64,000 nucleotides of DNA, taken from positions 235,911 to 299,910 of IMG/VR virus record IMGVR_UViG_3300035070_002626, one strand, 5' to 3'. The notes under the pieces were generated by a model, which was not told the origin of the DNA, made no database searches, and saw only the letters and a program-made list of their open reading frames with translations. The translations under genes were made by a program, and so were the position numbers. Shown here one piece after another: positions 6,045-58,176 of the stretch (within the stretch, counting starts at the first letter, position 1; each line of letters begins with the position of its first letter).

Positions 6045-6077
6045 AAAAAACCCCCATTGTAGTTATTACAATGAGGG
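6045..6077 (-). terminator. Intrinsic terminator
   Basis: 11-bp stem CCCUCAUUGUA/UACAAUGGGGG (one G.U) followed by U6. Confidence 0.75.
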
Positions 6078-6099
6078 CTAGCAAGTTAAAAAATTAATC

Positions 6100-6750: not shown

Positions 6751-6845
6751 GTTGTTTTCTCCTTGTAGAAGTCCGATGTAGGTTCTAGCCTACTACGCGG
6801 ATGGTGTTCCGCATAAAACGCAGTATTACGTTAGAAAAGTATTTA
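6751..6845 (-). promoter_or_regulatory. Late promoter plus three-hairpin structured 5' leader
   Basis: TAAATA 6840-6845; hairpins at 6817-6832, 6794-6815 and 6778-6793; SD AGGAG 6759-6763. Confidence 0.65.
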
Positions 6846-12501: not shown

Positions 12502-14223
12502 TTATGCTAGAGGCGTTTCTGCTGCAACTGCACCAGCATCGATGTCCACATCAATTTCCTCACCGCCTGCTTCGATGTCACCGCCGGTTTCAATATCTGC
12601 ATCAAAATCAGCAGGACTAACACCAACTGTGCGTAAATCTTTGCCCATTGGTTCAAGTTCACTTGGTTGTCCAGTTTCTTCACTCCACAATTTCGAGTTT
12701 TCTTGCAACTCGTCGTCAGTGAGACCCAGGTAACGTTTCATAAGAAAACGCTTGCTCATGTAGGGAATTTGCTCTAATGTGCTAAACGCTTGCATACGAG
12801 TTGTATCAAGTTCAGCTTGGCGATAACTAGCAAAATTCTGTGGTGGTGCAAACTTGATGTTAAACAACCCACTGTCAATATTAAAGCCTCTCCAGCGCAA
12901 AAACATTTTAAATTCATCATCAAGTTTTTGACAAATTTGCTTTTGCAGTCTTTCACAATACTGATTAAATCTGTATTCTTGTATAAGTGCAGTACCAACA
13001 CGCCCATCGTTCATTGGGCGATCACTGTCGTCTGGGCCAGTTGGAAGGTAACTGCTTGGAACACGAAGTCCTCTGCACATCTTGTTGTTAAAGTATTTTA
13101 AGTCATCAATTTGACCTAAGTTCTCGCCGCCTGGAAGTGTTTCAACTTTAGAACCACGACCTTCTGCTGTTTGTGGGAAGAAGTAGTCTTCGTTGATTGA
13201 CAATGGATTGTATGTAGTATCCATTGTAGTACCAGCTTGTCCGCCTTGTTGATTAGGAATACGTCTTTGGTGCACTTCATTTTTAACACGTTCAACAAAC
13301 TGCATAGCAAGGTGACTTGGCATGTTGCCTACATCAATATAGAATACTCTGCGCTCTGGTGCACGTTGTACACGATAGATTAGAATCGAGTCTTCAAGTA
13401 GTTCTTTTTGTTTGAATACTTTGAAAATCATTTCAAGTATACTTTGACTAAACGGCCAATAAAAATCCAAGCCTTCACTAAGTCCAAGGTGAACTATGTT
13501 TTTAGCATCAATCACTGTTTCGTTTATAGTGTGTTCAAATCTACTTTGTCCACCAGCAAGAGGCGCATTTGGGATAGTGTAGTTTGAATTTGATCCACCG
13601 CTGCCCCCAATTGACCCTGCATTAGGATTTGATCCATAATCTGTAGTGCTTTTAGGAGCAATGCTTAAATTTTGAAAGTTGGGATTAATATCACGAATAA
13701 CGTATTGTTCGGGTTTCTTGCCTTCGTTTTCGTTAACAATAACTCTTACTACTTTGGTCATGTCGACCCAGTATAGTTCAAAGGTTTCTGGATCTCTAAC
13801 AAAAACCTGATCGCCGTACTTCAACGTGTTTCGGAAGAGACGGAATATGCGTTGATCAAACTTGTTGAGTTTAGTCCACTGTTGTAGTTGTTTTCTAATA
13901 ATCTCAATTTCGTTGTTTGTAGGAGTGTCAGCGTAATCAACTTCAAACGGTGTGCCGTTGCTTTCATTGGTTTGTGTTGCAAACTCAGCAATAATATCTA
14001 AACACGCATTGATTTCACTGTCACAATCCATATTTTCATATTGATTATAACGTTCAATTCTGTTTGGATGTCCCGAATACACTTCTGGCAAGTGGCTTTG
14101 ATAGTTTTTAAAACCAAACTGACCACCAGACCCCGATTGCCCTCGTGCAGTTTGCCCGCTTATAGGAGAAAGTTGCCCACCTTCGTTTCCTACTACTTTA
14201 AAGTATTTTTTCCATCCAGCCAT
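12502..14223 (-). CDS. gp20: Portal vertex protein, gp20 family
   Basis: LLEDSILIYRVQRAPERRVFYIDVGNMP, EDYFFP, GRGSKVETLPGG, LRVPSSYL motifs; TAAATA 14259-14264. Confidence 0.95.
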   Translation of the reverse strand: MAGWKKYFKVVGNEGGQLSPISGQTARGQSGSGGQFGFKNYQSHLPEVYSGHPNRIERYNQYENMDCDSEINACLDIIAEFATQTNESNGTPFEVDYADTPTNNEIEIIRKQLQQWTKLNKFDQRIFRLFRNTLKYGDQVFVRDPETFELYWVDMTKVVRVIVNENEGKKPEQYVIRDINPNFQNLSIAPKSTTDYGSNPNAGSIGGSGGSNSNYTIPNAPLAGGQSRFEHTINETVIDAKNIVHLGLSEGLDFYWPFSQSILEMIFKVFKQKELLEDSILIYRVQRAPERRVFYIDVGNMPSHLAMQFVERVKNEVHQRRIPNQQGGQAGTTMDTTYNPLSINEDYFFPQTAEGRGSKVETLPGGENLGQIDDLKYFNNKMCRGLRVPSSYLPTGPDDSDRPMNDGRVGTALIQEYRFNQYCERLQKQICQKLDDEFKMFLRWRGFNIDSGLFNIKFAPPQNFASYRQAELDTTRMQAFSTLEQIPYMSKRFLMKRYLGLTDDELQENSKLWSEETGQPSELEPMGKDLRTVGVSPADFDADIETGGDIEAGGEEIDVDIDAGAVAAETPLA

Positions 14224-14264
14224 GTATTATTTTTCCAATATGAACATCGTAACTGAAGTATTTA

Positions 14265-16442
14265 TCACCCTCGACGGGTTGCATTTAGTATTTCCTGGCT
14301 GGTGTTGTTAGCACGTTGCATAGCAGTTACAAGTTCAGTTAATTTTTCAATGGTTAGATCCGACACTTCTTTTCTTGCTAGACTATCTGCATGCTGGCTT
14401 GCCAATTGATTGTTTGCTACTTTGAGATTTTCATTTAATACATCTGACAAATTGCTGCTGTTTTGTAACGTGCCGGCTGGGCCTGCTGTTGAAGGTACAG
14501 CATCTGATGTTCCTGGTGGAGCATATTTTTTTCTACTTTCTTCAAGTAGTTTTAATAAATCACTATTGTTTCCGTAATCTGGTGCTGCACTTGTTGGCGA
14601 AGTACCGTCACCTCCAGCTGGCATTGTTCCACTATCGCCACCAACAAATCTTCCAAAAAACATCTTTTTGATGCTTTCCCATGTCTCTGCGTTTTGTTTT
14701 CTAGAGTTTTCAAGTCTTTCTTGAATTTGTTGTTGCGCTATCTCTCTTTCTTCTGGACTCATACCTGTAAAATCTACAATTCCAGTACCAGATTCTGGCA
14801 TTATTTGTTCAGTAACTGCTGACTTTAATCCTCCTACACCGCCTTCGGAAAATATTTGTAGCATTTTAAGCATTTCGGTATTTGATTTTTGTACTATTTC
14901 GGCAAATTGTTTAACTGCACTAGCTGCTGGGCCCATAAGCTCTTTGGCCATTTTATCAGCTTCAATTGCTGCTCTTTGTAAAGCAACCTGTGCAGAAATT
15001 AAGTCAGCAGTTGTAGTATCCGTTGCTGTTGTTAAACTATCTTGTGATGTTTTTAATTTTTCTAAGTCGTCAGCTGTTAAATTAGCACGTTGGGACACAT
15101 TAAACATACCTTCAAACACTGCATCCAATGGTGTGCCAAGCCCAACTAGTCTAGCAATTCCTGCTGATCCTCCTAGAGAATCAAATCTATTGTTAATGCC
15201 TTGCATGATTAATGCTGTTGCATCAAGATCACTTATAGTACCTGCACGTAGTGCAGCAACCGCAGCAACACCTTCTTGCCCAGCTGCAAGAACAAACCCT
15301 TGTGCAGCTTCGGTACCGAGGTTGCCTGCCATTGCATCACGCAAACCATCAGCAATTTCTTTACTTGCAACAGTTTCAATAGCTGCTGATGTGGTTTGCA
15401 TGGCTAGTGCAGCTCGACGACCTTCGTCGCCGCCTAGTCTTTCTTGGATATCAGCAGCGGCACCCATTAAACGTATGTTTCGTGTTTGTGCATCCATTAT
15501 GGCTTGTTGATCGTCGATACTTCTACCAGTTATCCTCGAAAGAGTGGACAGTTTACGAATGTATTCTTCGCTGCCTTGTGCAAGTGCCCTTGCTGACATT
15601 GTTTCAACTCTACCAGTTCTTGCTTGTAACAACAAATATTTTGTTGTTAGTTCATTTTGTTTTTCGGCGCCCACACCCAAAGCTATCAAGCCTTGTCTAA
15701 ATGGTTCCATGTCTGCTGAGACTCGAGAAAATCTCTCAATACCTTCGCTTGCATCGCCAAACGCAAATGCAAGACCTTCAGCACCTTTGGACGCTACAGC
15801 ACTAAACTGTGTAAAACTAAGTCCAGCATCAATACTTTGATTCATTAGCTCAGTTAATCCGCTAGCAGTTAACCCGCCAACTTGCCCTACTGTGCGAAAT
15901 GCTTCACTTGCACGTTGTACTTCGGCTGTTACTTGCTGGCCTACTGTGGTAAGGATGTCAGCAACTGCTTCAGTAATTGCAGCGGCAAACTTGCCCACTG
16001 CATTGATTGCGCCTCCGATAACGCCGCCAACAACAGGAATACCGTCAGCAAGCCCGCCTAGTGCTTCACCAGCTACTCCTGCTAGTTTTCCTGTTGTTTT
16101 TAGTGCCGAGCCAGCTAGGTTTATCGATGGGTTCAAGCTGGTAAAGTCTTCCCTACTTTGCCTAACTGCACTAGCTGCTTCTGCAAAAGACGATCCGGCC
16201 TTAACAGCGCCAACTGCCATTTTACCTACAGCGGCAGTTCCTTTGCCGACTGAATTAGCAAACGACTCTTGGGAGGATATTATTGCTTTGTACTTGTTTT
16301 GAACATTGCTTAACTGGCTGTTGATTTTATTCCATTGAGAACTGCCTACTTGCTGACTGTTAGCCAGTTGCAACATAGACTGTTGCAATCGAGAGATTTC
16401 ATCATTCAATCTCTGTAGGTCTTGATCATCAAAATCTGCCAT
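14265..16442 (-). CDS. Tape-measure-like protein (about 725 aa)
   Basis: A/G-rich helical protein; start moved to ATG 16442 (MADFDDQDL) because the track start 16550 lies beyond the TAAATA box at 16486-16491 and overlaps the divergent gene. Confidence 0.7.
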   Translation of the reverse strand: MADFDDQDLQRLNDEISRLQQSMLQLANSQQVGSSQWNKINSQLSNVQNKYKAIISSQESFANSVGKGTAAVGKMAVGAVKAGSSFAEAASAVRQSREDFTSLNPSINLAGSALKTTGKLAGVAGEALGGLADGIPVVGGVIGGAINAVGKFAAAITEAVADILTTVGQQVTAEVQRASEAFRTVGQVGGLTASGLTELMNQSIDAGLSFTQFSAVASKGAEGLAFAFGDASEGIERFSRVSADMEPFRQGLIALGVGAEKQNELTTKYLLLQARTGRVETMSARALAQGSEEYIRKLSTLSRITGRSIDDQQAIMDAQTRNIRLMGAAADIQERLGGDEGRRAALAMQTTSAAIETVASKEIADGLRDAMAGNLGTEAAQGFVLAAGQEGVAAVAALRAGTISDLDATALIMQGINNRFDSLGGSAGIARLVGLGTPLDAVFEGMFNVSQRANLTADDLEKLKTSQDSLTTATDTTTADLISAQVALQRAAIEADKMAKELMGPAASAVKQFAEIVQKSNTEMLKMLQIFSEGGVGGLKSAVTEQIMPESGTGIVDFTGMSPEEREIAQQQIQERLENSRKQNAETWESIKKMFFGRFVGGDSGTMPAGGDGTSPTSAAPDYGNNSDLLKLLEESRKKYAPPGTSDAVPSTAGPAGTLQNSSNLSDVLNENLKVANNQLASQHADSLARKEVSDLTIEKLTELVTAMQRANNTSQEILNATRRG

Positions 16443-16505
16443 TAAATTCTTACCCGTTTTTACGCTGTATAAGTACAGTATCATATATTTATGGTAGGAA
16501 AAAAC
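16443..16505. promoter_or_regulatory. Divergent, converging late promoter pair
   Basis: TATAAGTA (+, 16468-16475) and TAAATA (-, 16486-16491) in the 63-bp gap between two divergent tail genes. Confidence 0.5.
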
Positions 16506-17351
16506 ATGGATCACAACAACCCAAACCCACTTGCAAAACACTTTAGGCAACCTGCAATTTATGTCACGTTGCCAAGCAATGGGGTGTACTACGACGAAAA
16601 TATTCTAGTAATGCCAGAGAATAAAGAAATTCCAATTTACCCAATGACAGCACTAGATGAAATTGCATATAGAACTGCTGACGCATTGTTCAACGGCGCT
16701 GCTATTGCTAATGTAATAAAAAGTTGCATCCCTGCTTTTGTAGACACTTGGCAGGTCAGCACACTTGATTTGGATACGTTGTTAATTGCTATAAGAATTG
16801 CAAGTTACGGACACGAAATGGAATTTACCAGCAAGTGTCCAAAGTGCAGCGAAACCAATGAGTTTGGCATTGACTTGAGAAGCATTATGGATCGAATCAA
16901 GACTCCAGATTTTTCTCAACCGGTTGTCAACGGAGACATTGAAATACATTTTAGACCGTTGACGTACACAGAACAAAATCGCAACAACATGTTGCAGTTC
17001 CAAGATCAAAAAATGTTGGAAGCATTACCTGATGCTGACCTTGATGAAGCTGAAAAGCTTAGATTGTTAACTGAAGCATTCCAAAGTCTCAGCGAGCTTA
17101 CTGTAAATGCAATCAGTGACAGTATCAGCATGATCAAAGCAGGCGATGATATTGTAGTAGACAAGGAACACATTACAGAATATATTAAAAACTGCGAATC
17201 TAAAGTTTTTTCAAAAGTACGCAAAAAAATTGAAGAAATTAAAAAACTAGGCGAAATTGACCCTCTTAACATTACTTGCGCCGATTGCAAGCACCAATAC
17301 GAAACGCCGTTTACTATGAATGTTGCAAATTTTTTCGAATCAGGCTCTTAA
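16506..17351 (+). CDS. Baseplate hub/tail assembly chaperone, gp26/gp51-like (G-type product)
   Basis: NPLAKHFRQP..YVTLPSNG N-terminus, CPKC and CADC Zn motifs, ends NFFESGS*; SD AGGA favours ATG 16506. Confidence 0.8.
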   Translation: MDHNNPNPLAKHFRQPAIYVTLPSNGVYYDENILVMPENKEIPIYPMTALDEIAYRTADALFNGAAIANVIKSCIPAFVDTWQVSTLDLDTLLIAIRIASYGHEMEFTSKCPKCSETNEFGIDLRSIMDRIKTPDFSQPVVNGDIEIHFRPLTYTEQNRNNMLQFQDQKMLEALPDADLDEAEKLRLLTEAFQSLSELTVNAISDSISMIKAGDDIVVDKEHITEYIKNCESKVFSKVRKKIEEIKKLGEIDPLNITCADCKHQYETPFTMNVANFFESGS

Positions 17352-17566
17352 CATCAGCTCCAGACGAGATTGAAGCAATCGTCGAGAAGATGGAAAAAGA
17401 AGTTAAGGGCCTAAAAGAGGATATGATGAAGATATGCTGGTACATGCGTGGCGGTATTAGCTACTCTGAAATCACACAGATGAGTGGTCCAGAACGAGAC
17501 ATCCTGGGAAGCATCATCAAGGGCAACTTGGAAACAGCAAAGAAAACAGGAAGAGACTTTTGGTAA
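17327..17566 (+). CDS. -1 frame extension of the preceding gene (GT-type domain), or a 58-aa ORF from ATG 17390
   Basis: Open -1 frame entered at slippery A-AAT-TTT-TTC; ICWYMRGGISYSEITQMSGPERDIL resembles C-terminal tail-chaperone domains. Confidence 0.7.
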   Translation, partial: KFFRIRLLTSAPDEIEAIVEKMEKEVKGLKEDMMKICWYMRGGISYSEITQMSGPERDILGSIIKGNLETAKKTGRDFW

Positions 17567-18063
17567 TCGATGAAGTAAAAGCCAACATCGAAGAATGGTT
17601 GATCAACTTTCTTGAAGTTCCACATCCTGCATTAGGCAATTGGTCACCATGCCCGTATGCTAGAAAAGCACGACTAGCCAACAAATACAGTGTGCGCATT
17701 GGCACTTCTCTAGCACAAGACATGATAAATGTTGCCGAAGAAGGCATGGGCAACCAAGATGTGTACATTTATGTGTACAACCCTGATGATTACGATCCTG
17801 AAGAATTTGAAGACACAATTGATAATGTCAACGAAGAAACACTAGTACCTATTGACATGCTAGCACTGTCAGACCATCCAGGTGTTCCTGAAGTAGTTAA
17901 TGGTGTGAAATTCAATCACGGAAAGTATGCACTAGCACTAGTACAAAGTCGCAGCAAGTTACACAGTCATGCAAAGATATTAGGTAAAAAAGGTTTCTAC
18001 AACGGCTGGGACGAAGAGTATCTTACTGGTCTATTTTCAAATCGTGAAGATCCACGACTTTAG
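17560..18063 (+). CDS. DUF1415-like protein
   Basis: WLINFLE...WSPCPYARKA resembles the DUF1415 xCPFA motif; TTG start uncertain. Confidence 0.55.
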   Translation: MVIDEVKANIEEWLINFLEVPHPALGNWSPCPYARKARLANKYSVRIGTSLAQDMINVAEEGMGNQDVYIYVYNPDDYDPEEFEDTIDNVNEETLVPIDMLALSDHPGVPEVVNGVKFNHGKYALALVQSRSKLHSHAKILGKKGFYNGWDEEYLTGLFSNREDPRL

Positions 18064-18709
18064 AATTTAACAGCTTGGTGTCTCTCTTGCACAACCACAC
18101 ATAGTGATCAACATCAGTGCTCCATTGTTGTCCCGTCCACCACTCAAATCCGTCAACTCGGCTTTTGTAAGTGCATATCTTCTCATATCCACTTCCCATG
18201 TACACATGCGAATACCCAGATTGTTTAGCCCAGGCAATTTCGTGATGCATTGTGCGTTCGCCTAAACGCAAATGCGGCTCATTATAGTCCCACGCAAATA
18301 ATGCTGTTTCAATACTGTTGGGACTGTATCTACGTAACTTACTCCATGCAACCAGCTCAGCATCGTGGTGATACTGAACATAGATATCCCAACTGAGTTG
18401 GTCATCAAGAGTGTACATTTTCTTAAAGCCTTTTTTCAAACAGTAGGCACTGTACACATGATCCATTTCGCTTGTAGAACTGTCAGTGATTTGGTAATTG
18501 TTTATTAGACTATAATCAGTGTTAGCAACATTTACTCTGGTACTACGACTTTGATACCAAATTTTTTCACCGTTGTCTACTGTTAATAACCATCCTTGAG
18601 CCAGCGCCTCATCGTGTTCACTGATGTCAACATCAACTAATTTTGGTATATTGTAGTTTATATCAGCTTGGCTCAGTGTGCCAAAAACATTATCGAATAC
18701 TATTTTCAT
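18023..18709 (-). CDS. Bpt/ATE1-like aminoacyl-tRNA-protein transferase
   Basis: C-terminal LRLGERTMHHEIAWAKQSGYSHVYMGSGYEKICTYKSRV fits the ATE_C pattern (SLG...I.WA...G..Y.YLGY....YK); N-terminal LAQGW matches the ATE_N L..GW/R motif. Confidence 0.7.
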   Translation of the reverse strand: MKIVFDNVFGTLSQADINYNIPKLVDVDISEHDEALAQGWLLTVDNGEKIWYQSRSTRVNVANTDYSLINNYQITDSSTSEMDHVYSAYCLKKGFKKMYTLDDQLSWDIYVQYHHDAELVAWSKLRRYSPNSIETALFAWDYNEPHLRLGERTMHHEIAWAKQSGYSHVYMGSGYEKICTYKSRVDGFEWWTGQQWSTDVDHYVWLCKRDTKLLNSKVVDLHDLKIDQ

Positions 18710-18740
18710 TACTAACTATATATAGAAATAAGGAAACCCA

Positions 18741-19064
18741 ATGGACATTTACACTATCTACTCTGACGTCAATGAAGGCGTTAATGCACACGAATTTGTA
18801 ACTAAAATGAGTGCGTTCTTAGATGAACTACCTACATTGCACAGCTATCGCATCACTAGAATGAAACTTGGATTTCGTAGTATGGATTTGCCAGAGTTTC
18901 GAATTGACATGGAATTTAAAAACATGCAAGATCTCGACGATGCAATGAAGCATGTAGTTACGGACACAAATGACATTGAAGTTAAGCACCATGCATTCAA
19001 TCAACTGGTTGATGTGGAAACTATACAACATTTTCTGTATAGAGACTTCCCAGACCAGTACTAA
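18741..19064 (+). CDS. DUF6614-like small alpha/beta protein
   Basis: YRITRMKLGFRSMDLPEFRIDMEF motif; AAGGA SD. Confidence 0.6.
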   Translation: MDIYTIYSDVNEGVNAHEFVTKMSAFLDELPTLHSYRITRMKLGFRSMDLPEFRIDMEFKNMQDLDDAMKHVVTDTNDIEVKHHAFNQLVDVETIQHFLYRDFPDQY

Positions 19065-19885
19065 TGCGCATCCTGCTGTTAAATGATACTTCTAAATATC
19101 ACAGCGGATGCAAACAGGTAATTAAAAACCTTAAATTACAAATGCAACCACATACCGCTGTGGTTAGCATTCCAGTGACTGTACCTTATATACAATACAA
19201 CGACTGGGATAACATTGATGCTGTTGTTGTTAACGGCGAAGGTACTATGCATAACAATCGCCAAGGTGCAGTTAGCTTACTAAACTTTGTAAACTTAGCC
19301 CAACAACAAAATAAACCCACAGTGCTGCTGAATTCAATTTGGCAGAACATGGACACTAGTTGGAAAAGTGTAACTGATAATTTGCAGCAATGGAGTGTAA
19401 GAGATGTGTATAGCCAACAACACGCTCAACACGATTTTGGAAGAACTCCAGACTTGTGCCCAGACATTAGTTATATCAATTGCCCAGATGTGTCAACTGT
19501 TGAAACACAACACAACATCACACTAGGGCAATATGCATTTGACAGTGTACACAACCACACCAAACACACGCAACGAATAAACATATTCAAACAATCATGG
19601 CATGATGTAGTTAATCAGTTGCGCAACAGCAATCTATGTGTTACTGGACGCTTTCATGAGGTTATGGCATGTATCTGTGCAGAAACACCATTTGTTGCAG
19701 TTGAAGGTAACAGTTGGAAAATGCAAGCACTCATTGCAAGTGCTGGTGCAGATATACCTGTACTCAATGATTTTCCAACAGACTTACAAGATGTTGAGCA
19801 TTTTTCCAGAACATACCATTTAGAATATGCTAAAGTATTTAAGTGGCATAAGCAAACAATATCAAAGTTTTCTTTAACATTATAA
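19064..19885 (+). CDS. Polysaccharide pyruvyltransferase-like protein
   Basis: VVNGEGTMH, WSVRDVYS, CPD and VTGRFHEVMACI..ETPF motifs; TAATG translational coupling. Confidence 0.75.
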   Translation: MRILLLNDTSKYHSGCKQVIKNLKLQMQPHTAVVSIPVTVPYIQYNDWDNIDAVVVNGEGTMHNNRQGAVSLLNFVNLAQQQNKPTVLLNSIWQNMDTSWKSVTDNLQQWSVRDVYSQQHAQHDFGRTPDLCPDISYINCPDVSTVETQHNITLGQYAFDSVHNHTKHTQRINIFKQSWHDVVNQLRNSNLCVTGRFHEVMACICAETPFVAVEGNSWKMQALIASAGADIPVLNDFPTDLQDVEHFSRTYHLEYAKVFKWHKQTISKFSLTL

Positions 19886-19902
19886 GATGTCTAAAGACAT
19901 CT
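19885..19902. terminator. Perfect 7-bp hairpin at the convergence point
   Basis: AGATGTC-TAAA-GACATCT directly after the 19885 stop; only a weak U-tract. Confidence 0.4.
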
Positions 19903-19929
19903 ATTAATTCGCTATCGCTCTTAATAGTT

Positions 19930-20340
19930 TTTTTATACAAGTGATTAATATTATTAAGCACGAGAGAATCGAGTGTTTCATTATCATCTAGATTTTTTGG
20001 TCATACTTGCCCTTGCACAGGGCAAGCATAACCGAACATACATCATCATCTGAGTCGTGTCAGTCACTTGAATAAAGAGATTTGTAATAGTTACAACGGA
20101 TGCGGTTACGCTTTACACCCTACTCTAGCCTTGTCTCGCAACGGAGCCCTGTAATATACTCATTCAAGCAAGTATATCGAGAGCACAGGTTGTATCTGTT
20201 TCACAGAGCCTGTATCATTTTAGCCTTAAGTTAGCCTGTCCTTGGAACTCACTATATCTGTTCATGCAATTACTACATGTTCTCATAGTGGGTCGAGGTG
20301 CCTCGACCAAACAATGTTCCTATAATAGCTGGGGAATTTT
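19930..20340 (-). ncRNA. Candidate large structured non-coding RNA (boundaries approximate)
   Basis: Largest ORF-free gap; at least six stems, with G.U pairs that form only on the minus strand (e.g. 15-bp stem 19999-20033). Confidence 0.6.
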
Positions 20341-20452
20341 AAAAGGGAAAGTTAAAAAGAAGTTTGAGCATTGCTCTGTTTATTTGCCTGTGCATAGTGT
20401 TTATGCGAATATTTTGTATGTAGTAAATTTATGTATATAGTAAAGCATTATG

Positions 20453-21442
20453 TTAACTTTGTAAACTGTCTAGTATTTCTTTTGCATACTTTTGGTGTGT
20501 TAGCGGCCCAGGGTGCATGTTGTTTGTGCCTAAATCTAAAAACTCTTCGTATAAACCCTGTATGTCTTCAAAATTTGGCGTAAATTTTCTAATAACATTG
20601 CATGTCTTGTTGAATAGAAAGCGGTCTAGTGCACTATTTCCAGGAAACATGTTGTAGCATTTTAATGTAGCACCAATTTTTTTGCAATAATTTTCTACTT
20701 GTAAGATTGAACACAACTGGCGGTGTAGGTTATTTTCTGAAAAAAGCTCATAACGTGAAAAATGTAATTTTTTTGATAGTTTTAAATTTTCCTTTGGCCT
20801 TGGTGGCCATCCTGGTCTTATAAAATGCAATTCGCCTTCGTGTGCATGGTAAAAACGTTCCCAGTGTGTTATACCCCAAACAACAATATCTCCAGAGATA
20901 ATATTACTTCTAAGTATTTGGTCAGCTGACCAAGATATATCGGTTCCGCCTTTTGCAATATTTGTAACCGGCATATCCAAGTGCTTGCCAAGTAGGTATC
21001 CATAGTTTTCTGTTTCACTTACACCAGTTGCAGAACTAAAACTACATCCTGCCACCCATAGCTGATTTTTGTCAGTTTGTCTTTCTTTTATCGTTGGAAT
21101 TGTGCAGTGTAAACCGTTAATATGTTCAAGTCCATATGTTTTTGTAAAATTACTTCCGTGTAACAAGAGTGGTTCGAGTACATATTTCTCGTTTTCAGTA
21201 TACAAATTATTATCTGTTTCCCAACCGTGTTGCGGTGAATAGTGTACAATATCGCTAGTAATTATGCAATTCCATATCTTTGATTCTGCTTTAGACAGAT
21301 CTGCTATGCTTGTATAACCACTTTCTGGTGAAGCAAGCCACGATGTATAGTTTGAATCATTTACTAGTACACTGTCTGGATCAACAAATTTAGCCAATCT
21401 TGCTAGATATTCGTTGCTGCTCCCAATCCAAAGTTGTTTCAT
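20453..21442 (-). CDS. SGNH/GDSL-like hydrolase or acyltransferase domain protein
   Basis: VAGCSFS (block I Ser), NIAKGG (block II) and C-terminal MHPG (block V His). Confidence 0.6.
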   Translation of the reverse strand: MKQLWIGSSNEYLARLAKFVDPDSVLVNDSNYTSWLASPESGYTSIADLSKAESKIWNCIITSDIVHYSPQHGWETDNNLYTENEKYVLEPLLLHGSNFTKTYGLEHINGLHCTIPTIKERQTDKNQLWVAGCSFSSATGVSETENYGYLLGKHLDMPVTNIAKGGTDISWSADQILRSNIISGDIVVWGITHWERFYHAHEGELHFIRPGWPPRPKENLKLSKKLHFSRYELFSENNLHRQLCSILQVENYCKKIGATLKCYNMFPGNSALDRFLFNKTCNVIRKFTPNFEDIQGLYEEFLDLGTNNMHPGPLTHQKYAKEILDSLQS

Positions 21443-21846
21443 TCTTTTAGTATGCCTTTTTGATGTACACGCACCTGTATGTGTCCATTGTACCAGTCTT
21501 TGCTTTCTAGCACTCGATGTGCAAATTGTTCTCTAGCTTCGATGTAGCTAAGTTCGCTTTTGCTACTACACCAAAACATTATTTCACGTTTAAATTTGTC
21601 TTTGCCTAGCAATTCTACATCAGCTGATAATGCATCACTACTTCCATAGTAGTCTTTCCAGTCGCTTTCTACAGTGTATCTACGTTTGTTAACTCTGCCT
21701 TTAAGCGGCTTTCGGCTGCGTTTAAATTGTGCAAGTTTCTTACCAATATACTTTCGGTTGTTTGTTGTATTTGTGATCAAATATACAAACCCAATTGCGC
21801 CCTCTGGAATGTCTTCTACTTCGGTGTCTTTGTAATACCATGTCAT
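21439..21846 (-). CDS. GIY-YIG endonuclease
   Basis: GFVYLITNTTNNRKYIGKK, YYGSS, LSYIE and YNG motifs. Confidence 0.85.
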   Translation of the reverse strand: MTWYYKDTEVEDIPEGAIGFVYLITNTTNNRKYIGKKLAQFKRSRKPLKGRVNKRRYTVESDWKDYYGSSDALSADVELLGKDKFKREIMFWCSSKSELSYIEAREQFAHRVLESKDWYNGHIQVRVHQKGILKE

Positions 21847-21857
21847 ATAAACATTTA

Positions 21858-23615
21858 TCAGATTATTTCCACATCGTTGCTATAACTTGTAAAGCCGTTT
21901 TCCTTGACAACTTTAAGCAAATTATTTACACGACCTGCAAGTTCATCCTTGTGGGAAACAAGCCATATACTCTTGTTGCGTTCTCGTGCCATCTTTTTAA
22001 GCAATGCTAAACTTGCTTCGACTCCTGATGTGTCCATGCCTGAATCAACTAACTCGTCGATAAACAACAAGTTAATTGAGCCATACAAGCTTTCCCACAC
22101 ATCGCGAAACGCCCAGCTCATACTGAGTATAAGTCTGTTGCGCTCACCACGTGACAAGTTATCAAAATCCAAGTCTCTGCCTAGTTCTTGAATCTCCACT
22201 GTGAGATCGTTTTGGAATATAACAGTGTGGGGTAAACCTATCCGATCTAGGTAATGTGTTAATCTAGAATTTAGATAAGAAAGATTTTGGTCAATAATGC
22301 GTTTTCTAACAAAACTATCTTTGTTTGTTAACAACTTCAGCAAGAAGTCTTGGTGTTCTTGCAATCGTGTTAAGTCGTTCACTTTGTCGTAACTAATTTC
22401 TTGTAATGCCGAAGTTTCCATATCGGCTATCTGATCAACATAAGGATCAGTTTCGTCCTTCTTGTTTTCCAGTTGTGTTTCAAGAGAGCTCAGTGTTGAT
22501 TTGTGATTGTGAGCATCGGTTAAGTTGTCGTAAAATGTCTTGGGCTTTGCGGGCACATCTTTCTTCTCGATTAACAGTGTAGCAATGCCTTGCTCTAATT
22601 CTGCTAGGAAGTTAGCTGCATCCAGGTGCTCTTTTTTTGCATCAATCATTTGTTGTTTGTGTGTTTCGAGGTGATCAACACTTTGTCCACATGCGCTACA
22701 AGTACCATCTTCGATGCTGTCAATTGACTTTTTAGTTCTTTTGAAATCTCTATCAGCTCGGCTAACTTGTGCCTGTAGCGCAGCAATGTCTTTTTGTAAT
22801 TGCGATTGTTCATTGTCGACTACAGTCCAGTTAACTAACTGTTCGTGTGCTTCGAGTTCAGATTCGATATTAACATGTGCTAAATCACTAATAGCACGTT
22901 CGATGTTGCTGATTTCTTCTTTGTTTTTATTCAACCAAAGAGTTTGTCTACGTTTGAGTGCATCAACTTGCTCACCAATTTTTTCATTGGCATTTTGTAA
23001 TGCCCGAATTGACATTTCTTCTTCTTTGATTAAATCTTTGGTATTTTTACTTAGTTCTTTGATTTTATCAGCACGTTCACTAAGCAATGTGATACCCAGC
23101 AGTTGCTCGATTATCTCACGTTGATCGTTTGTTTTGAGACTTAAAAACGGTTCGGTGTACGTGTTTAGTGCTACCAAGTGTTTGAACATGGTGTGACTCA
23201 TATTCAAAAGTTTGTTGATAGCACCTTGTGTTTCTCTACTATCGCCTTGTGCATTGTCATCAGCTTCTTGTTCGCTGTTGTTGATATAAAACTTCAACAC
23301 ATTAGGGCTACGACCACGTTCGATTCTATAGCACTTTTCTCCTATGCAAAAGTCTAAACTGACCAACATACCTTTGCTGTTAGTCTTGTTGATTAGATTG
23401 TTGCGTTTGATATTAGTAAGTGCTTGACCGTACAGTGCATAGCTAAGTGCATTGATAATAGTAGTCTTACCAGTGCCATTGCGACTGCCGTCACCGCCGA
23501 GATCAAGATTTTCGCCTAGTACCAATGTAAGGTCTTGCCTGTCAAAGTTAATTGCTTGCGTGGCATTACCTACACTCATGAAGTTCTTGACAGTAAGGTC
23601 TTTGAGCTGAATCAT
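21858..23615 (-). CDS. gp46: Recombination ATPase gp46 (Rad50/SbcC)
   Basis: Walker A NGTGKTT, CSAC zinc hook, signature LSRGE, Walker B LFIDE, VSH. Confidence 0.95.
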   Translation of the reverse strand: MIQLKDLTVKNFMSVGNATQAINFDRQDLTLVLGENLDLGGDGSRNGTGKTTIINALSYALYGQALTNIKRNNLINKTNSKGMLVSLDFCIGEKCYRIERGRSPNVLKFYINNSEQEADDNAQGDSRETQGAINKLLNMSHTMFKHLVALNTYTEPFLSLKTNDQREIIEQLLGITLLSERADKIKELSKNTKDLIKEEEMSIRALQNANEKIGEQVDALKRRQTLWLNKNKEEISNIERAISDLAHVNIESELEAHEQLVNWTVVDNEQSQLQKDIAALQAQVSRADRDFKRTKKSIDSIEDGTCSACGQSVDHLETHKQQMIDAKKEHLDAANFLAELEQGIATLLIEKKDVPAKPKTFYDNLTDAHNHKSTLSSLETQLENKKDETDPYVDQIADMETSALQEISYDKVNDLTRLQEHQDFLLKLLTNKDSFVRKRIIDQNLSYLNSRLTHYLDRIGLPHTVIFQNDLTVEIQELGRDLDFDNLSRGERNRLILSMSWAFRDVWESLYGSINLLFIDELVDSGMDTSGVEASLALLKKMARERNKSIWLVSHKDELAGRVNNLLKVVKENGFTSYSNDVEII

Positions 23616-24172
23616 ATAGCTGACAATCTTTCTTTGACTTTTTGTAATTCGAGTTTTTCTAAATTCATAACTGTTGTGAAGTTTGAATCTAAAACATCTT
23701 TATATTGTAACACAGCATTGCGTACTTCGTCAATTGGTAATGTTACCAATCGATCAATCTCGGATAGTATAGCTTTCATGCGATCAATTGGATCAGTGAT
23801 GCTATCATACGTTTCGTCTATAAAAGGACTAAACGTTTTGAATCCTTTGGTTTTTAAAAACTTCAAAGTATTTGCAGGACCAACAATTAAAAACATCCGT
23901 TTGTTTACAATCGGTCTGAGTATTTTTTCTGTAACAGCAGGATATGGATGCGCGAATACAGATTCAGTAACAATGTCAATGCCAATTTTTTGATAAAAAT
24001 CTTGCTGAAGGGAGGAAGTACGATCGTCAGTGCCCCATATCCAGTCAAGCGGCTTGCCAGTGATTAGCGGATCTTTAAAAGAGTTTATATCTGGATTAGT
24101 TTCTAGTTCGCCGTAGTGGTTCCAGTTTTCGTTCACTTTAGTGCTATTATTGGTATAAATTCTAACTTTCAT
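23612..24172 (-). CDS. Glycosyltransferase-like C-terminal domain protein
   Basis: IVTES...VTEKILRPI...FLIVG...GFKTFSPFIDETYD motif; ATGA coupling. Confidence 0.55.
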   Translation of the reverse strand: MKVRIYTNNSTKVNENWNHYGELETNPDINSFKDPLITGKPLDWIWGTDDRTSSLQQDFYQKIGIDIVTESVFAHPYPAVTEKILRPIVNKRMFLIVGPANTLKFLKTKGFKTFSPFIDETYDSITDPIDRMKAILSEIDRLVTLPIDEVRNAVLQYKDVLDSNFTTVMNLEKLELQKVKERLSAI

Positions 24173-24741
24173 TTGTCATCAACATTTTTAGATTTTTGAT
24201 ATTTGTATGAAGTTGCAATCATATCAAAATAATTTTGTTTTTTAATATGATTGTATAATGCATTACGGTGAACTCGACTTGATCCCATCATTGATACACA
24301 ATGTTTTTCAATTTTATCACTGTTTATGTCGATATTGTTCCATTTTGGATTAGACATAGAAGCATTGTAGTAAGGAACCGACATACAATCATCGAATACA
24401 ATAGGCAGATCGTATTGGTGTAATCTGTTAGGAATCAACAGCTTGAATTCATTAAGATATCCTGGATTGTTTGTAAATATTATTGTTCTTCCTAGGGATA
24501 TGTCGACTTCCTGGAATGTTCGAATTAAGTTAAATGTTGTTAAACCGTATCCACAATGTGGCAGATAGTATTGCAGGTCAAAATGTTCAATTACATAAAA
24601 ATCGTTAGGTGCATAAACTTCTTTTTTTGTTTGAATCAATTTGTTTTTGAGTAAGTCAAAATTTTGATCAAACATATTAATATCCAGCATATCAATAATA
24701 TTAATATTCTCGTTAATTGTGTTGATAAATTTTTTGTTCAA
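24169..24741 (-). CDS. Hypothetical protein, possibly the N-terminal half of the next gene
   Basis: TTG start just after the gp47 stop; ends with CVSMMGSSRVHR.ALY motif. Confidence 0.55.
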   Translation of the reverse strand: MNKKFINTINENINIIDMLDINMFDQNFDLLKNKLIQTKKEVYAPNDFYVIEHFDLQYYLPHCGYGLTTFNLIRTFQEVDISLGRTIIFTNNPGYLNEFKLLIPNRLHQYDLPIVFDDCMSVPYYNASMSNPKWNNIDINSDKIEKHCVSMMGSSRVHRNALYNHIKKQNYFDMIATSYKYQKSKNVDDK

Positions 24742-24742
24742 A

Positions 24743-25756
24743 TCACAAACTCCTGTAAATTTCTAGCAAAAGTTTATTGTCGTAAAACTCGCTGTCAATT
24801 GCAATAATCTGCTCAGTGATAATTTGATCAACACTTTCAAACTTAATATCACCGGGATTCATTTCTTCTTCTAGTGCACTTTGCTTGTTAGGAATCAATG
24901 CCATTTCTCGCAATTGGTACTTGGTAATGTATTGCTCTTTGATGTAGTTTGCTTCTTCGTAAGAAATTTCAATATCCAAGTTAACACGAACATGCATTCT
25001 CGGCTTAAGTCGTTTGTCAGCAAAGTCGATTACATCGCTAAGATTCATAACACTGTACAAAGGCTGATTGGGCCAAGAGATGTATTCCTTGGTACCATCC
25101 CAATCTAGTATCATCACTCCACGCTGATCGTCACCGGCATCAGAGAAGTTATGCGGAAACGCATTACCAATGTAGTTGATGTTGTTCTTCTTTTGCCGCA
25201 AATGGAAGTGCCCACTGAAAACTTCTCCGTAGCCAGTAAAATGTTCTGCGTTAATATCACCATGATCTGGCATCTCTACCATTGCATTCATCTTAAAGTG
25301 GGGAAGTTCAAAGTGTCCAAACATGTATCTAGCACTAGCATTTTTAACACGTTTATAATCATCACCAACCAGCCACGGAACAAGTATAACATCGTCTTGT
25401 TCAAACCATTCGTTGTGGATGTGCACATTTGGAATATGCTGTGCCCACTCGTAACTGTAAATGTCACGCTTGTCTCTATAATACAAGTCGTGATTGCCTG
25501 TTATAAAATGTGTGTTGTCAAATCCTGAACTTAGTTTTTCTAATGCTCTCAAACTATGATGCATTGTTTGCAAACTCAAACTTGCTCTATGATGATGCCA
25601 ATCTCCCATAAAGATGCAAGTTTCGCAACCGTGTAATTTGCCTTGTTCTACTGCCCACTCAACAAACTCCTCACAATCTTGATTGTGAAGAGCACTGTTA
25701 CTTTTCATGCCAAAGTGGATGTCAGTAAAGACCAAGGCTTTCTTGAACAAACCCAT
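24743..25756 (-). CDS. gp47: Recombination nuclease gp47 (Mre11/SbcD)
   Basis: FTDIHFG, GDWHH, GNHD, FGHFE, SGHFH phosphoesterase motifs; ATG 25756 preferred to the track start 25798. Confidence 0.95.
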   Translation of the reverse strand: MGLFKKALVFTDIHFGMKSNSALHNQDCEEFVEWAVEQGKLHGCETCIFMGDWHHHRASLSLQTMHHSLRALEKLSSGFDNTHFITGNHDLYYRDKRDIYSYEWAQHIPNVHIHNEWFEQDDVILVPWLVGDDYKRVKNASARYMFGHFELPHFKMNAMVEMPDHGDINAEHFTGYGEVFSGHFHLRQKKNNINYIGNAFPHNFSDAGDDQRGVMILDWDGTKEYISWPNQPLYSVMNLSDVIDFADKRLKPRMHVRVNLDIEISYEEANYIKEQYITKYQLREMALIPNKQSALEEEMNPGDIKFESVDQIITEQIIAIDSEFYDNKLLLEIYRSL

Positions 25757-25766
25757 GTATAAGTCC

Positions 25767-58175: not shown

Positions 58176-58176
58176 T

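What the first reader, a model, noticed from the sequence alone, without database searches (positions are those of the whole stretch)
17560..19064. Phage-encoded Bpt/ATE-like N-degron transferase in a three-gene cassette
Seen: an ATE_C-like gene on the opposite strand, flanked by DUF1415-like and DUF6614-like genes, with a CTATATATAG palindrome in the 31-bp divergent gap. Known: Bpt/ATE transfer Leu or Arg from aminoacyl-tRNA to N-terminal Asp/Glu, routing proteins to ClpS-ClpAP. Inference: the phage may redirect host proteolysis or tag protease-cleaved proteins. This fold is also used for tRNA-dependent aminoacylation of small molecules or glycans.
Basis: partly seen in the sequence, partly recalled or inferred. 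Interest (0 to 1): 0.6.

Follow-up and report, generated by a model that had tools for sequence, protein, structure and literature searches.

The report
Phage ATE-like aminoacyl-tRNA transferase cassette
A marine jumbo T4-like phage carries a divergent relative of the enzymes that move an amino acid from a charged tRNA onto protein ends, conserved beside a probable haem enzyme; it lacks the residue that reads acidic protein ends, so it probably tags something other than the classical N-degron substrates.

Summary
The minus-strand gene (18023-18709, 228 aa) belongs to the ATE/Bpt superfamily. It just passes Pfam ATE_C, a family profile hits only Ate1 among solved structures, and it aligns to bacterial Bpt over 187 columns. 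Its model matches human and yeast ATE1 over about 200 residues, including the N-terminal lobe.

It is not an orthodox Asp/Glu N-degron transferase. The Arg that reads acidic N-termini (klAte1 R80) is Leu in 45 of 50 relatives, and the ATE_N cysteines are gone. The catalytic Lys is invariant. The donor pocket is Ate1-like (Ser/Thr, Ser/Thr, Glu), not Bpt-like, so a basic amino acid, probably Arg, is predicted.

The family is large (524 clusters at 50% identity) and was found almost only on uncultured phage contigs. It was not found in 50,697 GenBank phage records.

The "DUF1415-like" neighbour falls in the DUF1415/DUF6875 (cytochrome P422) group, with a YqcI/YcgG-like fold and an invariant Cys-Pro motif. 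It is adjacent in 27 of 34 dereplicated lineages. The DUF6614 gene is adjacent in 19 of 33.

Arg-tRNA transferase AglC with haem hydroxylase AglA is a known precedent for such a pair. The acceptor is unknown. The palindrome is not significant.

The parts
17560..18063 (+). P2: 167-aa protein of the DUF1415/DUF6875 (cytochrome P422) group, a probable Cys-ligated haem protein. TTG start. Its 3' end overlaps the ATE-like gene by 41 bp, convergently.
   Evidence: Pfam DUF6875 at E 1e-3 for this protein. Of 30 relatives, 26 hit DUF6875 (best 1e-6) and 4 hit DUF1415. Invariant residues are C31-P32-x-A34, D105 (followed by nearly invariant H106-P107) and E111. The AF2 model has pLDDT 94.7. The only structural outlier is AglA 9ub3, Z 6.8 with 153 aligned, the next hit at Z 4.0. 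Atlas TM 0.84 to a DUF1415/DUF6875 cluster. hhalign against bacterial DUF1415 gives E 2.2e-5 and puts Cys on Cys.
18023..18709 (-). ATE-like gene: 228-aa member of a phage clade of the ATE/Bpt aminoacyl-tRNA transferase superfamily. Catalytic Lys is K182. Donor-pocket residues are T135, T153, E157 and V169. L41 stands at the position of the acidic-N-terminus-reading Arg.
   Evidence: Pfam ATE_C 26.4 bits against 25. A family profile hits only Ate1 in the PDB, E 1.5e-4. hhalign against Bpt gives E 2.4e-5 over 187 columns. AF2 pLDDT 89.6. Foldseek top hit is ATE1 at E 2.7e-7. VIA gives Z 14.1 with 200 aligned.
18710..18740 (.). 31-bp divergent intergenic gap with the palindrome CTATATATAG at 18716-18725. 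It is AT-rich and TATA-like, possibly a T4-type late-promoter-like element for one or both genes.
   Evidence: Sequence. The palindrome is not above chance and not conserved. Relatives keep short TATA-rich gaps, and L028 has TATAAATA just upstream of the ATE start codon.
18741..19064 (+). P3: 107-aa DUF6614 protein, the most conserved member of the trio. Function unknown.
   Evidence: Pfam DUF6614 at 71.3 bits. No non-synonymous change against relatives in which the ATE-like protein differs by 7-9%. Mean column identity 64%. Atlas clusters are 94-100% viral. No PDB sequence match. None found in GenBank phages.
19064..19885 (+). P4: 273-aa polysaccharide pyruvyl transferase-like gene directly after P3. 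It is a lineage-specific neighbour, not part of the conserved core.
   Evidence: Pfam PS_pyruv_trans at 37.2 bits against 25.3. A homologue lies in this position, next to P3, only in the closest relatives (L003, L004, L007); one further locus, L070, has a partial 34% match about 5 kb away.

Best explanation
The minus-strand gene encodes a soluble, two-lobed aminoacyl-tRNA-dependent aminoacyl transferase. It belongs to a large clade of the ATE/Bpt superfamily found almost only on phage contigs.

Inferred mechanism: like Ate1, Bpt and FemX, it binds the 3' end of a charged tRNA. The invariant Lys (K182, equivalent to klAte1 K304) stabilises attack of an acceptor amine on the aminoacyl ester, which forms an amide bond.

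Its amino-acid pocket is of the Ate1 type: Ser/Thr, Ser/Thr and a conserved Glu at the position of klAte1 E277. It is not of the hydrophobic Bpt type. The donor is therefore most likely a basic amino acid, Arg being the best guess.

Its acceptor pocket is different. The Arg that reads N-terminal Asp/Glu is a conserved Leu, and the ATE_N cysteine cluster is missing. The acceptor is therefore not the canonical acidic protein N-terminus. It is either another kind of protein or peptide N-terminus, or a small-molecule amine.

The enzyme is inferred to work in a pathway with the convergent neighbour P2 and probably with the divergent DUF6614 protein. P2 is a probable Cys-ligated haem oxygenase of the DUF1415/DUF6875/YqcI-like group. 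Together they would make and oxidatively tailor an aminoacyl (arginyl) conjugate during infection.

Shown here: homology, fold, residue conservation and gene linkage. Inferred: tRNA dependence, donor identity, haem binding by P2 and pathway coupling.
For: Family membership:
- Pfam ATE_C is over its cut-off.
- A profile of 50 homologues hits only Ate1 chains among 177,635 PDB sequences, E 1.5e-4.
- hhalign against 11 bacterial Bpt gives probability 75%, E 2.4e-5, over 187 columns that span both lobes.
- The AF2 model has pLDDT 89.6.
- Foldseek's top hits are human, yeast and K. lactis ATE1. These are followed by aminoacyl-phosphatidylglycerol synthases (with two CoA-dependent GNATs ranked among them) and, further down, L/F-transferase.
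- VIA gives Z 14.1 with 200 of 228 residues aligned to ATE1. Plain GNATs align only to residues 70-223.

Residue map, with roles taken from PMC9351520:
- K304 corresponds to K182, Lys in 50 of 50.
- E277 corresponds to E157, Glu in 49 of 50. Bpt has Gln here.
- S255 corresponds to Thr or Ser in 46 of 50. Bpt has Ala.
- S273 corresponds to Ser or Thr in 49 of 50. Bpt has Ala.
- R80 corresponds to L41, Leu in 45 of 50 and never Arg or Lys.

Selection and spread:
- pN/pS is about 0.1.
- 349 IMG/VR contigs encode relatives.
- There are 524 clusters at 50% identity.

Linkage:
- P2 is adjacent in 27 of 34 dereplicated lineages.
- P3 is adjacent in 19 of 33.
- The ATE-P2 pair persists outside the hub-gp46 synteny, in L028, L056, L059, L069/70, L071 and L075.
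- The pair also persists after an inversion, in L063-66.

Nature of P2. DUF6875 proteins are Cys-ligated haem hydroxylases (bioRxiv 10.64898/2025.12.11.692455). YqcI/YcgG AglA is a Cys-ligated haem hydroxylase (PMC12866846).

Precedent for the pairing: AglC uses Arg-tRNA to arginylate aminomethylphosphonate, and AglA then hydroxylates that product.
Against: - No biochemical data exist for any member.
- The sequence signal to ATE/Bpt is modest: Pfam 1.4 bits over cut-off, hhalign probability 75%.
- The donor-pocket inference rests on a profile alignment at about 15% identity. The fourth pocket residue (klAte1 Y289) is hydrophobic, as in Bpt.
- P2 is below the DUF6875 gathering score and does not keep the exact RxGxVCP motif. 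The phage record shows no ferredoxin gene to supply electrons.
- P2 relatives occur without any ATE-like gene in cyanophages, HMO-2011 and CRP-345. One ATE subgroup (L076-L082) has no P2. The two genes are therefore not obligate partners.
- Much of the adjacency could be inherited synteny within one phage lineage.
- The complex prediction for ATE plus P2 gave no verdict.
Confidence: 0.6

Rival explanations
1. Classical N-degron transferase. The enzyme adds Leu or Arg to N-terminal Asp/Glu of host or phage proteins. This routes them to ClpS-ClpAP, directly for Leu or through host Aat for Arg.
For: Homology to Ate1 and Bpt over both lobes, and an invariant catalytic Lys. Several homologues carry the automatic JGI name arginyl-tRNA--protein-N-Asp/Glu arginylyltransferase. 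Bpt and Ate1 do recognise acidic N-termini (PMC9351520).
Against: The equivalent of klAte1 R80 is Leu in 45 of 50 and never basic. In klAte1, R80E abolishes activity and R80K leaves only low residual activity. The Tyr87 equivalent falls in a gap, and the Tyr25/Cys N-terminal motif is absent. No ATE_N hit appears even at E <= 1. Divergent members also read G[WF]L where Bpt has GFRRSG. The conserved partners are a haem-enzyme-like protein and a DUF, not protease adaptors.
Confidence: 0.15
2. Plain acyl-CoA-dependent GNAT (an acetyltransferase) that only resembles ATE_C.
For: The C-terminal lobe has a GNAT fold. RimI-type and other acetyltransferases reach Z 11-12.4 on residues 70-223.
Against: The best matches are ATE1 over 200 residues, including the N-terminal lobe. 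Sequence profiles find only Ate1 or Bpt. The catalytic Lys shared with FemX and Ate1 is invariant. Read directly from the sequence, the stretch equivalent to GNAT motif A (L147-T153) does not fit the CoA-pyrophosphate signature Q/R-x-x-G-x-G/A. That signature is cited from general knowledge.
Confidence: 0.05
3. A tRNA-directed factor rather than a biosynthetic enzyme. It would bind, sequester or deacylate a charged host or phage tRNA, to tune translation or to blunt a tRNA-targeting defence. The DUF6614 protein would act as an anti-defence partner.
For: The fold binds tRNA acceptor ends. The phage carries 9 tRNAs of its own, including tRNA-Arg(TCT). A short paralogue lies in the tRNA-rich region. 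One phage protein predicted to be DUF6614-like was reported with anti-Druantia type I activity (bioRxiv 10.1101/2024.04.14.589459).
Against: The full catalytic and donor-pocket set is conserved, which argues for transfer chemistry. The DUF6614 link to defence rests on one predicted annotation of an unrelated phage. The PADLOC library was not scanned. P3 has no homologue in GenBank phages.
Confidence: 0.1

Closest known systems
Bacterial Bpt (aspartate/glutamate leucyltransferase; ATE_N + ATE_C, about 240 aa)
   Same: Similar size. Homologous over both lobes (hhalign E 2.4e-5, 187 columns). Shares the G-[FW] motif, the Arg of the I-R-V strand (R58), the Y-K catalytic dyad and the L-G-x-x motif.
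   Different: Bpt has GFRRSG, with the acidic-N-terminus-reading Arg, and four conserved Cys. The phage clade has G-W/F-L and no Cys motif. The Bpt donor pocket is Ala/Ala/Gln/Leu; the phage pocket is Ser-Thr/Ser-Thr/Glu/hydrophobic. The phage clade adds an invariant GFEWWTGxxW and LCxRD tail.
Eukaryotic Ate1 arginyl-tRNA-protein transferase (7WFX, 7TIF, 8TZV)
   Same: Best structural match: Z 13-14 with about 200 residues aligned, and Foldseek E 2.7e-7. The catalytic Lys304 equivalent is invariant. The Arg-binding pocket residues S255, S273 and E277 are matched by Ser/Thr, Ser/Thr and Glu.
   Different: Ate1 is about 500 aa with insertions and a C-terminal domain. It has an N-terminal Cys cluster, and R80, Y25 and Y87 for acidic N-termini. 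None of these is kept.
AglC + AglA of argolaphos biosynthesis (Arg-tRNA-dependent amide synthase plus YqcI/YcgG thiolate-haem hydroxylase)
   Same: The same pairing of enzyme types: a tRNA-dependent aminoacyl transferase with a Cys-ligated haem 'sandwich-fold' protein. AglA is the only structural outlier for P2, Z 6.8. AglC arginylates a small amine using ArgRS and tRNA, and AglA hydroxylates the product.
   Different: The candidate tRNA-dependent ligases named in the argolaphos cluster paper (AlpF, AlpO) are annotated as Fem/GNAT-type (pfam13480), not ATE-type. P2 is about 70 residues shorter than AglA. By sequence it is closer to DUF6875/DUF1415 than to YqcI/YcgG. The argolaphos genes lie in an actinomycete biosynthetic cluster, not in a phage.
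Cytochrome P422 (DUF6875) tryptophan hydroxylases and C-S bond formers
   Same: This is the sequence family nearest to P2: 26 of 30 relatives hit it, best E 1e-6. Similar length. A conserved Cys-Pro lies in the N-terminal third, where P422 has its haem-ligating Cys.
   Different: P2 is below the Pfam cut-off. The motif is LGGWxPCPYA rather than RxGxVCP. The substrate-binding motifs SBR1-3 were not examined.
FemX, aminoacyl-PG synthases (MprF C-domain), L/F-transferase Aat, and Sba18/Sbb17
   Same: GNAT-derived aminoacyl-tRNA-dependent transferases. All appear among the structural matches at Z 11-12 or Foldseek E 1e-5 to 1e-4. They show that the fold serves peptidoglycan, lipid, protein and small-molecule acceptors.
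   Different: They rank lower and cover less of the model than ATE1. No sequence-level hit.

Membership tests
ATE/Bpt aminoacyl-tRNA-protein transferases | ATE_C domain (PF04377) above the gathering score | tested here: met
   26.4 bits against a cut-off of 25, residues 66-172. 28.4 bits in the six-frame search. Marginal, but backed by the PDB profile search and hhalign against Bpt.
ATE/Bpt aminoacyl-tRNA-protein transferases | ATE_N domain (PF04376) with conserved Cys motifs | tested here: not met
   No ATE_N hit at E <= 1. hhalign aligns the N-lobe, but the Bpt Cys columns (C60, C63, C66) are W/Y/Q/S and the C16-x-Y18 region is unaligned. The lobe is kept as a fold: ATE1 aligns from residue 1.
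ATE/Bpt aminoacyl-tRNA-protein transferases | Catalytic Lys (klAte1 K304, FemX K305) | tested here: met
   K182 is Lys in 50 of 50, within an invariant Y-K. Role taken from PMC9351520.
ATE/Bpt aminoacyl-tRNA-protein transferases | Basic residue that reads the acidic N-terminal residue (klAte1 R80, first R of GFRRSG) | tested here: not met
   The aligned position is L41: Leu 45, Ser 3, Tyr 1, Ile 1 of 50. The next position is also non-basic.
ATE/Bpt aminoacyl-tRNA-protein transferases | Donor pocket of Ate1 type (S255, S273, E277, Y289) or Bpt type (A, A, Q, L) | tested here: inconclusive
   Three of four positions are Ate1-like: Thr/Ser 46 of 50, Ser/Thr 49 of 50, Glu 49 of 50. The fourth is hydrophobic, as in Bpt. 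This suggests a basic donor but rests on a remote alignment.
ATE/Bpt aminoacyl-tRNA-protein transferases | Two-lobed ATE fold rather than a single GNAT domain | tested here: met
   VIA gives Z 14.1, rmsd 4.3, 200 aligned, model 1-213 against human ATE1, and Z 13.5 against klAte1. Plain GNATs cover only 70-223.
ATE/Bpt aminoacyl-tRNA-protein transferases | Transfer of an amino acid from aminoacyl-tRNA to a protein N-terminus | not testable with these tools
   Needs an enzyme assay.
Cytochrome P422 / DUF6875 (for P2, 17560-18063) | Pfam DUF6875 above the gathering score | tested here: not met
   19.6 bits against 24.5 for this protein. 26 of 30 relatives match at E <= 0.1, best 9.7e-7. This is a superfamily-level relation.
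Cytochrome P422 / DUF6875 (for P2, 17560-18063) | Conserved haem-ligating Cys in a Cys-Pro motif (RxGxVCP) | tested here: inconclusive
   C31-P32 is invariant in 30 of 30. It aligns with the invariant CPFA of bacterial DUF1415. The upstream R-x-G-x-V spacing is not kept. Haem binding is untested.
YqcI/YcgG thiolate-haem hydroxylases (for P2) | Sandwich fold with an N-terminal Cys ligand | tested here: inconclusive
   AglA 9ub3 gives Z 6.8, rmsd 4.2, 153 aligned. It is the only hit above Z 5 among 48,161 chains. Foldseek is not significant. No Pfam YqcI_YcgG hit.
DUF6614 (for P3, 18741-19064) | Pfam PF20319 above the gathering score over the full length | tested here: met
   71.3 bits against 25, residues 1-106 of 107. 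Atlas neighbours are DUF6614 clusters.
L-arginine:X amidinotransferases (for the ATE neighbour in L028, L059, L071, L075, L084, L086, and for window 59893-60882) | Homology to AGAT/StrB1/SxtG with the catalytic Asp, His and Cys motifs | tested here: met
   The profile hits AGAT, SxtG, HsvA and StrB1 at E 9e-37 to 7e-30. R-D, G-H-x-D and the catalytic Cys-x-Thr (C381, T383 in L071 numbering) are invariant, within a conserved G-G-x-x-C-x-T block.

The most novel reading that the evidence does not exclude
The cassette is a phage-borne, ribosome-independent arginylation pathway. A phage-specific ATE-clade enzyme takes Arg from Arg-tRNA and attaches it to a non-canonical acceptor. That acceptor would be a small amine or a non-acidic protein or peptide N-terminus. 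A thiolate-haem P422/DUF1415-like oxygenase then tailors the conjugate, for example by guanidine or side-chain hydroxylation. In some lineages an adjacent L-arginine amidinotransferase adds further guanidino chemistry. This would be the first tRNA-dependent aminoacyl-transfer pathway known in a virus of bacteria. It would represent a widespread marine phage metabolite or protein mark.
Probability: 0.3. Interest if true: 0.85.

Novelty: new variant of a known kind. Interest (0 to 1): 0.64.

Why it matters
Aminoacyl-tRNA transferases of the ATE/Bpt type are known only as cellular N-degron enzymes. Here a large clade of them (524 clusters at 50% identity, 349 viral contigs) turns up almost only in uncultured marine and other environmental T4-like phages. 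These enzymes keep the catalytic core but have a remodelled acceptor pocket.

Two searches of the paper library for phage or viral arginyl-tRNA protein transferases turned up no study of a phage enzyme of this type.

If the enzyme is active, phages divert charged tRNA for something other than translation: marking proteins or making a metabolite. The conserved pairing with a member of the newly recognised thiolate-haem families (P422, YqcI/YcgG) gives a concrete two-enzyme system to test.

The result also corrects automatic annotations that call these proteins Asp/Glu arginyltransferases.

Tried and rejected
- Complex prediction of the ATE-like protein with P2: no verdict, score 0.00. This is no evidence either way.
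- Palindrome as a regulatory site: unique, not above chance and not conserved. The sigma-70 promoter and terminator scan of 16400-20600 found nothing beyond shuffles. TATAAATA is not enriched in the window.
- Search for cultured relatives: there is no DNA match for 14000-24000 among GenBank phages. There is also no protein match for the ATE-like protein or for P3.
- Bacterial genomes: only 4 short MAG contigs among 185,579 species genomes, found with a single peptide pattern. These are probably binned phage DNA.
- The 111-aa genes upstream of the P2 homologues in HMO-2011 and S-RIM44 are not P3 relatives and are not related to each other.
- c18, the gene that follows the ATE-like gene in subgroup L076-L082, is not a P2 homologue and has no Pfam or PHROG hit.
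- The P3 profile finds nothing among PDB sequences.
- PHROGs has no family for the ATE-like protein, P3 or P4.
- Two literature searches found nothing on phage ATE or Bpt. The second was swamped by an unrelated acronym.
- Phage-encoded ferredoxin or psbA: none found. There is therefore no phage redox partner for P2 and no sign of a cyanophage.
- Metatranscriptome contigs cover the cassette. Contigs cannot prove transcription, so this is not used as expression evidence.
Full report
**What is there**

The window is the last 64 kb of a 299,910-bp IMG/VR virus record estimated 86% complete. It is a T4-type jumbo myovirus.
- Portal gp20 lies at 12502-14223 and the baseplate hub at 16491-17351.
- gp46/47-like SbcCD lies at 21858-25798, and a gp55-like late sigma factor at 25767-26681.
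- A 4506-aa ORF is also present.

The nearest cultured phages by portal are Sinorhizobium Phosso, Pseudomonas PA5oct and Agrobacterium Atu_ph07, at about 50% identity. There is no psbA. The stretch occurs in marine, seawater and estuary metagenomes of at least ten studies.

Four ORFs lie between the hub module and a GIY-YIG endonuclease plus gp46:
- P2, 17560-18063 (+), 167 aa.
- The ATE-like gene, 18023-18709 (-), 228 aa.
- P3, 18741-19064 (+), 107 aa.
- P4, 19064-19885 (+), 273 aa.

P2 and the ATE-like gene converge and overlap by 41 bp. The ATE-like gene and P3 diverge across 31 bp that hold CTATATATAG.

**The observation**

The genes are under purifying selection: pN/pS is 0.10-0.13 for the ATE-like gene, 0.10-0.17 for P2 and 0 for P3.

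The palindrome is unique and not above chance. It is not conserved. Relatives keep a short AT-rich gap with TATA-like runs, and L028 has the T4 late-promoter word TATAAATA a few bases before the ATE start. It is best read as a possible late-promoter-like element, unproven.

**The ATE-like protein**

Several lines agree that it belongs to the ATE/Bpt superfamily.
- Pfam ATE_C is just over its cut-off, 26.4 against 25 bits.
- A word search found 119 relatives of 157-267 aa.
- A profile of 50 of them hits only Ate1 chains in the PDB, E 1.5e-4.
- Against an alignment of 11 bona fide gammaproteobacterial Bpt proteins, hhalign gives probability 75% and E 2.4e-5 over 187 columns that cover both lobes.
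- The AF2 model has pLDDT 89.6.
- Its best Foldseek matches are human, yeast and K. lactis ATE1, E 2.7e-7. Aminoacyl-PG synthases follow, with two CoA-dependent GNATs ranked among them, and L/F-transferase comes further down.
- VIA gives Z 14.1 with 200 residues aligned from residue 1. Plain acetyltransferases reach Z 12.4 or less on residues 70-223 only.

**Residue-level test**

Residue roles are taken from the K. lactis Ate1 structure paper (PMC9351520). The alignments are those.

| klAte1 residue | Role | Bpt | Phage clade (of 50) |
|---|---|---|---|
| K304 | catalytic | Lys | K182, Lys 50 |
| S255 | Arg pocket | Ala | Thr/Ser 46 |
| S273 | Arg pocket | Ala | Ser/Thr 49 |
| E277 | Arg pocket | Gln | E157, Glu 49 |
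| Y289 | Arg pocket | Leu | Val/Phe/Leu |
| R80 | reads acidic N-terminus | Arg (first R of GFRRSG) | L41, Leu 45, never basic |

In klAte1, E277K is inactive and E277D is like wild type. R80E abolishes activity. Tyr87 falls in a gap, and the Cys/Tyr25 motif is not aligned. More divergent members also read G-[WF]-L at the GFRRSG position.

The clade adds its own invariant features: WYQSRSTR, GFEWWTGxxW and LCxRD.

Conclusion: the catalytic machinery and an Ate1-like donor pocket are kept, but the acceptor site is different. It works like an aminoacyl-tRNA transferase but fails a defining test for an Asp/Glu N-degron transferase.

**Distribution**

- 349 IMG/VR contigs encode relatives.
- An exhaustive profile search finds 524 clusters at 50% identity, of which 223 are at E <= 1e-10.
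- None is in 50,697 GenBank phage records.
- Only four short MAG contigs appear among 185,579 species genomes.
- Canonical Bpt was present in 27 of 61 sampled gammaproteobacterial genomes.

**The partners**

Across 36 ATE groups dereplicated at 85% identity, P2 is adjacent in 27 of 34 with enough flank. P3 is adjacent in 19 of 33. The ATE-P2 pair also occurs away from the hub-gp46 synteny and survives an inversion.

P2:
- It has an invariant C-P-x-A motif, plus an invariant Asp followed by nearly invariant His-Pro.
- It matches DUF6875 in 26 of 30 relatives and DUF1415 in 4 of 30.
- It aligns Cys on Cys with bacterial DUF1415, E 2.2e-5.
- It has TM 0.84 to a DUF1415/DUF6875 Atlas cluster.
- Its only structural outlier is AglA, Z 6.8 with 153 aligned, the next hit at Z 4.0.
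- DUF6875 was recently renamed cytochrome P422, a family of Cys-ligated haem enzymes that hydroxylate tryptophan.
- AglA is a Cys-ligated haem hydroxylase of the YqcI/YcgG family.

P2 is therefore a probable thiolate-haem protein. This is inferred, not shown.

P3 is DUF6614. It is the most conserved of the three, its family is nearly all viral, and its function is unknown.

P4, a pyruvyl transferase-like gene, sits next to P3 only in the closest relatives.

**An arginine thread**

In five of the dereplicated ATE groups (six loci in all) the ATE-like gene is flanked by a gene of about 400 aa with no Pfam hit. A profile shows it to be an L-arginine:X amidinotransferase. It matches AGAT, SxtG and StrB1 at E 9e-37, with the catalytic Asp/His/Cys motifs.

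Its position varies. It is inserted between P3 and the ATE-like gene (L028, L071), co-directional with overlapping stop and start (L075), or on the other side (L084).

This genome has four paralogues, none next to the cassette.

There is a documented precedent for the ATE-P2 type of pair. AglC uses ArgRS and tRNA to arginylate aminomethylphosphonate, and AglA then hydroxylates the guanidine of that product. The argolaphos cluster lists GNAT-type tRNA-dependent ligases beside the YqcI/YcgG gene.

Taken with the Ate1-like Glu in the donor pocket, this makes Arg the best guess for the donor. It makes a "make and tailor an arginyl conjugate" pathway a serious reading. Each link is inference.

**Weighing**

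- Best explanation (0.6): an aminoacyl-tRNA-dependent transferase with a non-canonical acceptor, probably working with P2.
- Classical N-degron enzyme (0.15): disfavoured by the missing acceptor residues.
- Plain GNAT (0.05).
- tRNA-directed or anti-defence factor (0.1).

Arguments against strong coupling:
- P2 relatives exist without an ATE-like gene in cyanophages, HMO-2011 and CRP-345.
- One ATE subgroup carries a GNAT and an unrelated 157-aa gene instead of P2.
- No phage ferredoxin was found.
- The complex prediction gave no verdict.

**Novelty**

This is a new variant of a known kind. It is a large ATE-superfamily clade, found almost only on phage contigs. Its acceptor pocket is altered and it has a conserved thiolate-haem-like partner.

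I found no paper on it. Automatic names that call its members Asp/Glu arginyltransferases are not justified by the residues.

- Only table 11 was used.

Noticed in passing
L002:1486-1926 (-), about G000:C1:24700-25140, outside the window: A 146-aa paralogue that keeps only the C-lobe of the ATE-like protein. It matches at 35% identity over residues 76-190 and keeps the Y-K motif, but has Ile at the E157 position. It lies in the tRNA-rich part of the genome. The exhaustive search shows that such 140-150-aa short forms are a family of their own, matching profile positions 57-191.
   Followed up: partly
window 59893-60882 (+), with 58144-59238, 60795-62309 and 62324-63676: An L-arginine amidinotransferase-like gene, one of four paralogues in this phage. 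It sits among three radical SAM genes. Another paralogue (about G000:C1:29559-30587) lies right next to the phage tRNA-Arg(TCT) at 29444-29520. The role of amidinotransferases in phages is unknown to me.
   Followed up: partly
window 18023-18709 compared with 17560-18063 and 18741-19885: Between this genome and its 91-93% relatives (L004, L007), synonymous divergence of the ATE-like gene (pS 0.32) is two to four times that of the flanking genes (0.07-0.16). This hints at recombination or mosaicism centred on this gene.
   Followed up: no
window 18023-18063, and the same place in relatives (for example L009, L019): The convergent 3' overlap of P2 and the ATE-like gene (41 bp here, about 30-40 bp in relatives) is conserved. 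Transcripts of the two genes must therefore be antisense to each other at their ends, and no terminator can lie between them.
   Followed up: partly
L031:4146-4475 and 31 other loci, between the segE-like gene and P3; not present in the window: A conserved stretch of about 300-440 bp, called here as a small ORF of 56-109 aa whose translation looks unlike a protein. It may be a small gene in another frame or a non-coding RNA.
   Followed up: no
window 37929-51449 (+): A single 4506-aa ORF among the structural genes. Not examined.
   Followed up: no
window 21439-21846 (-): A SegE-type GIY-YIG homing-endonuclease-like gene between the variable region and gp46. It is conserved at this spot in 46-48 of the related loci, which is unusual stability for a homing endonuclease.
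   Followed up: no
L109:3902-4441 (S-RIM44 gp181) and L108:3504-4031 (HMO-2011 gp66): Distant P2 (DUF1415/DUF6875-like) homologues exist as unannotated hypothetical proteins in cultured cyanophages. They also occur in a SAR116 phage and a roseophage. In S-RIM44 the gene lies just upstream of the baseplate wedge genes. These offer a culturable system for testing haem binding.
   Followed up: partly
L110:4710-5762 and 6001-6756; P0259 contig: Divergent low-GC members of the ATE-like clade sit next to other redox enzymes. P0202 is next to a Rieske ring-hydroxylating oxygenase alpha subunit, and P0259 is next to a Redoxin/AhpC protein. This may echo the oxygenase pairing seen with P2.
   Followed up: no
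window 16500-20000: Contigs from three metatranscriptome libraries (marine and salt marsh, two studies) cover the whole cassette at about 95-96% identity. This is compatible with transcription, but contigs cannot prove it.
   Followed up: partly
P0263 (597 aa, from the exhaustive search): A protein made of about ten tandem copies of a unit of about 55 residues that resembles the N-lobe motif (GFLL...W.R...ARS). It could be an assembly artefact or a true repeat protein.
   Followed up: no
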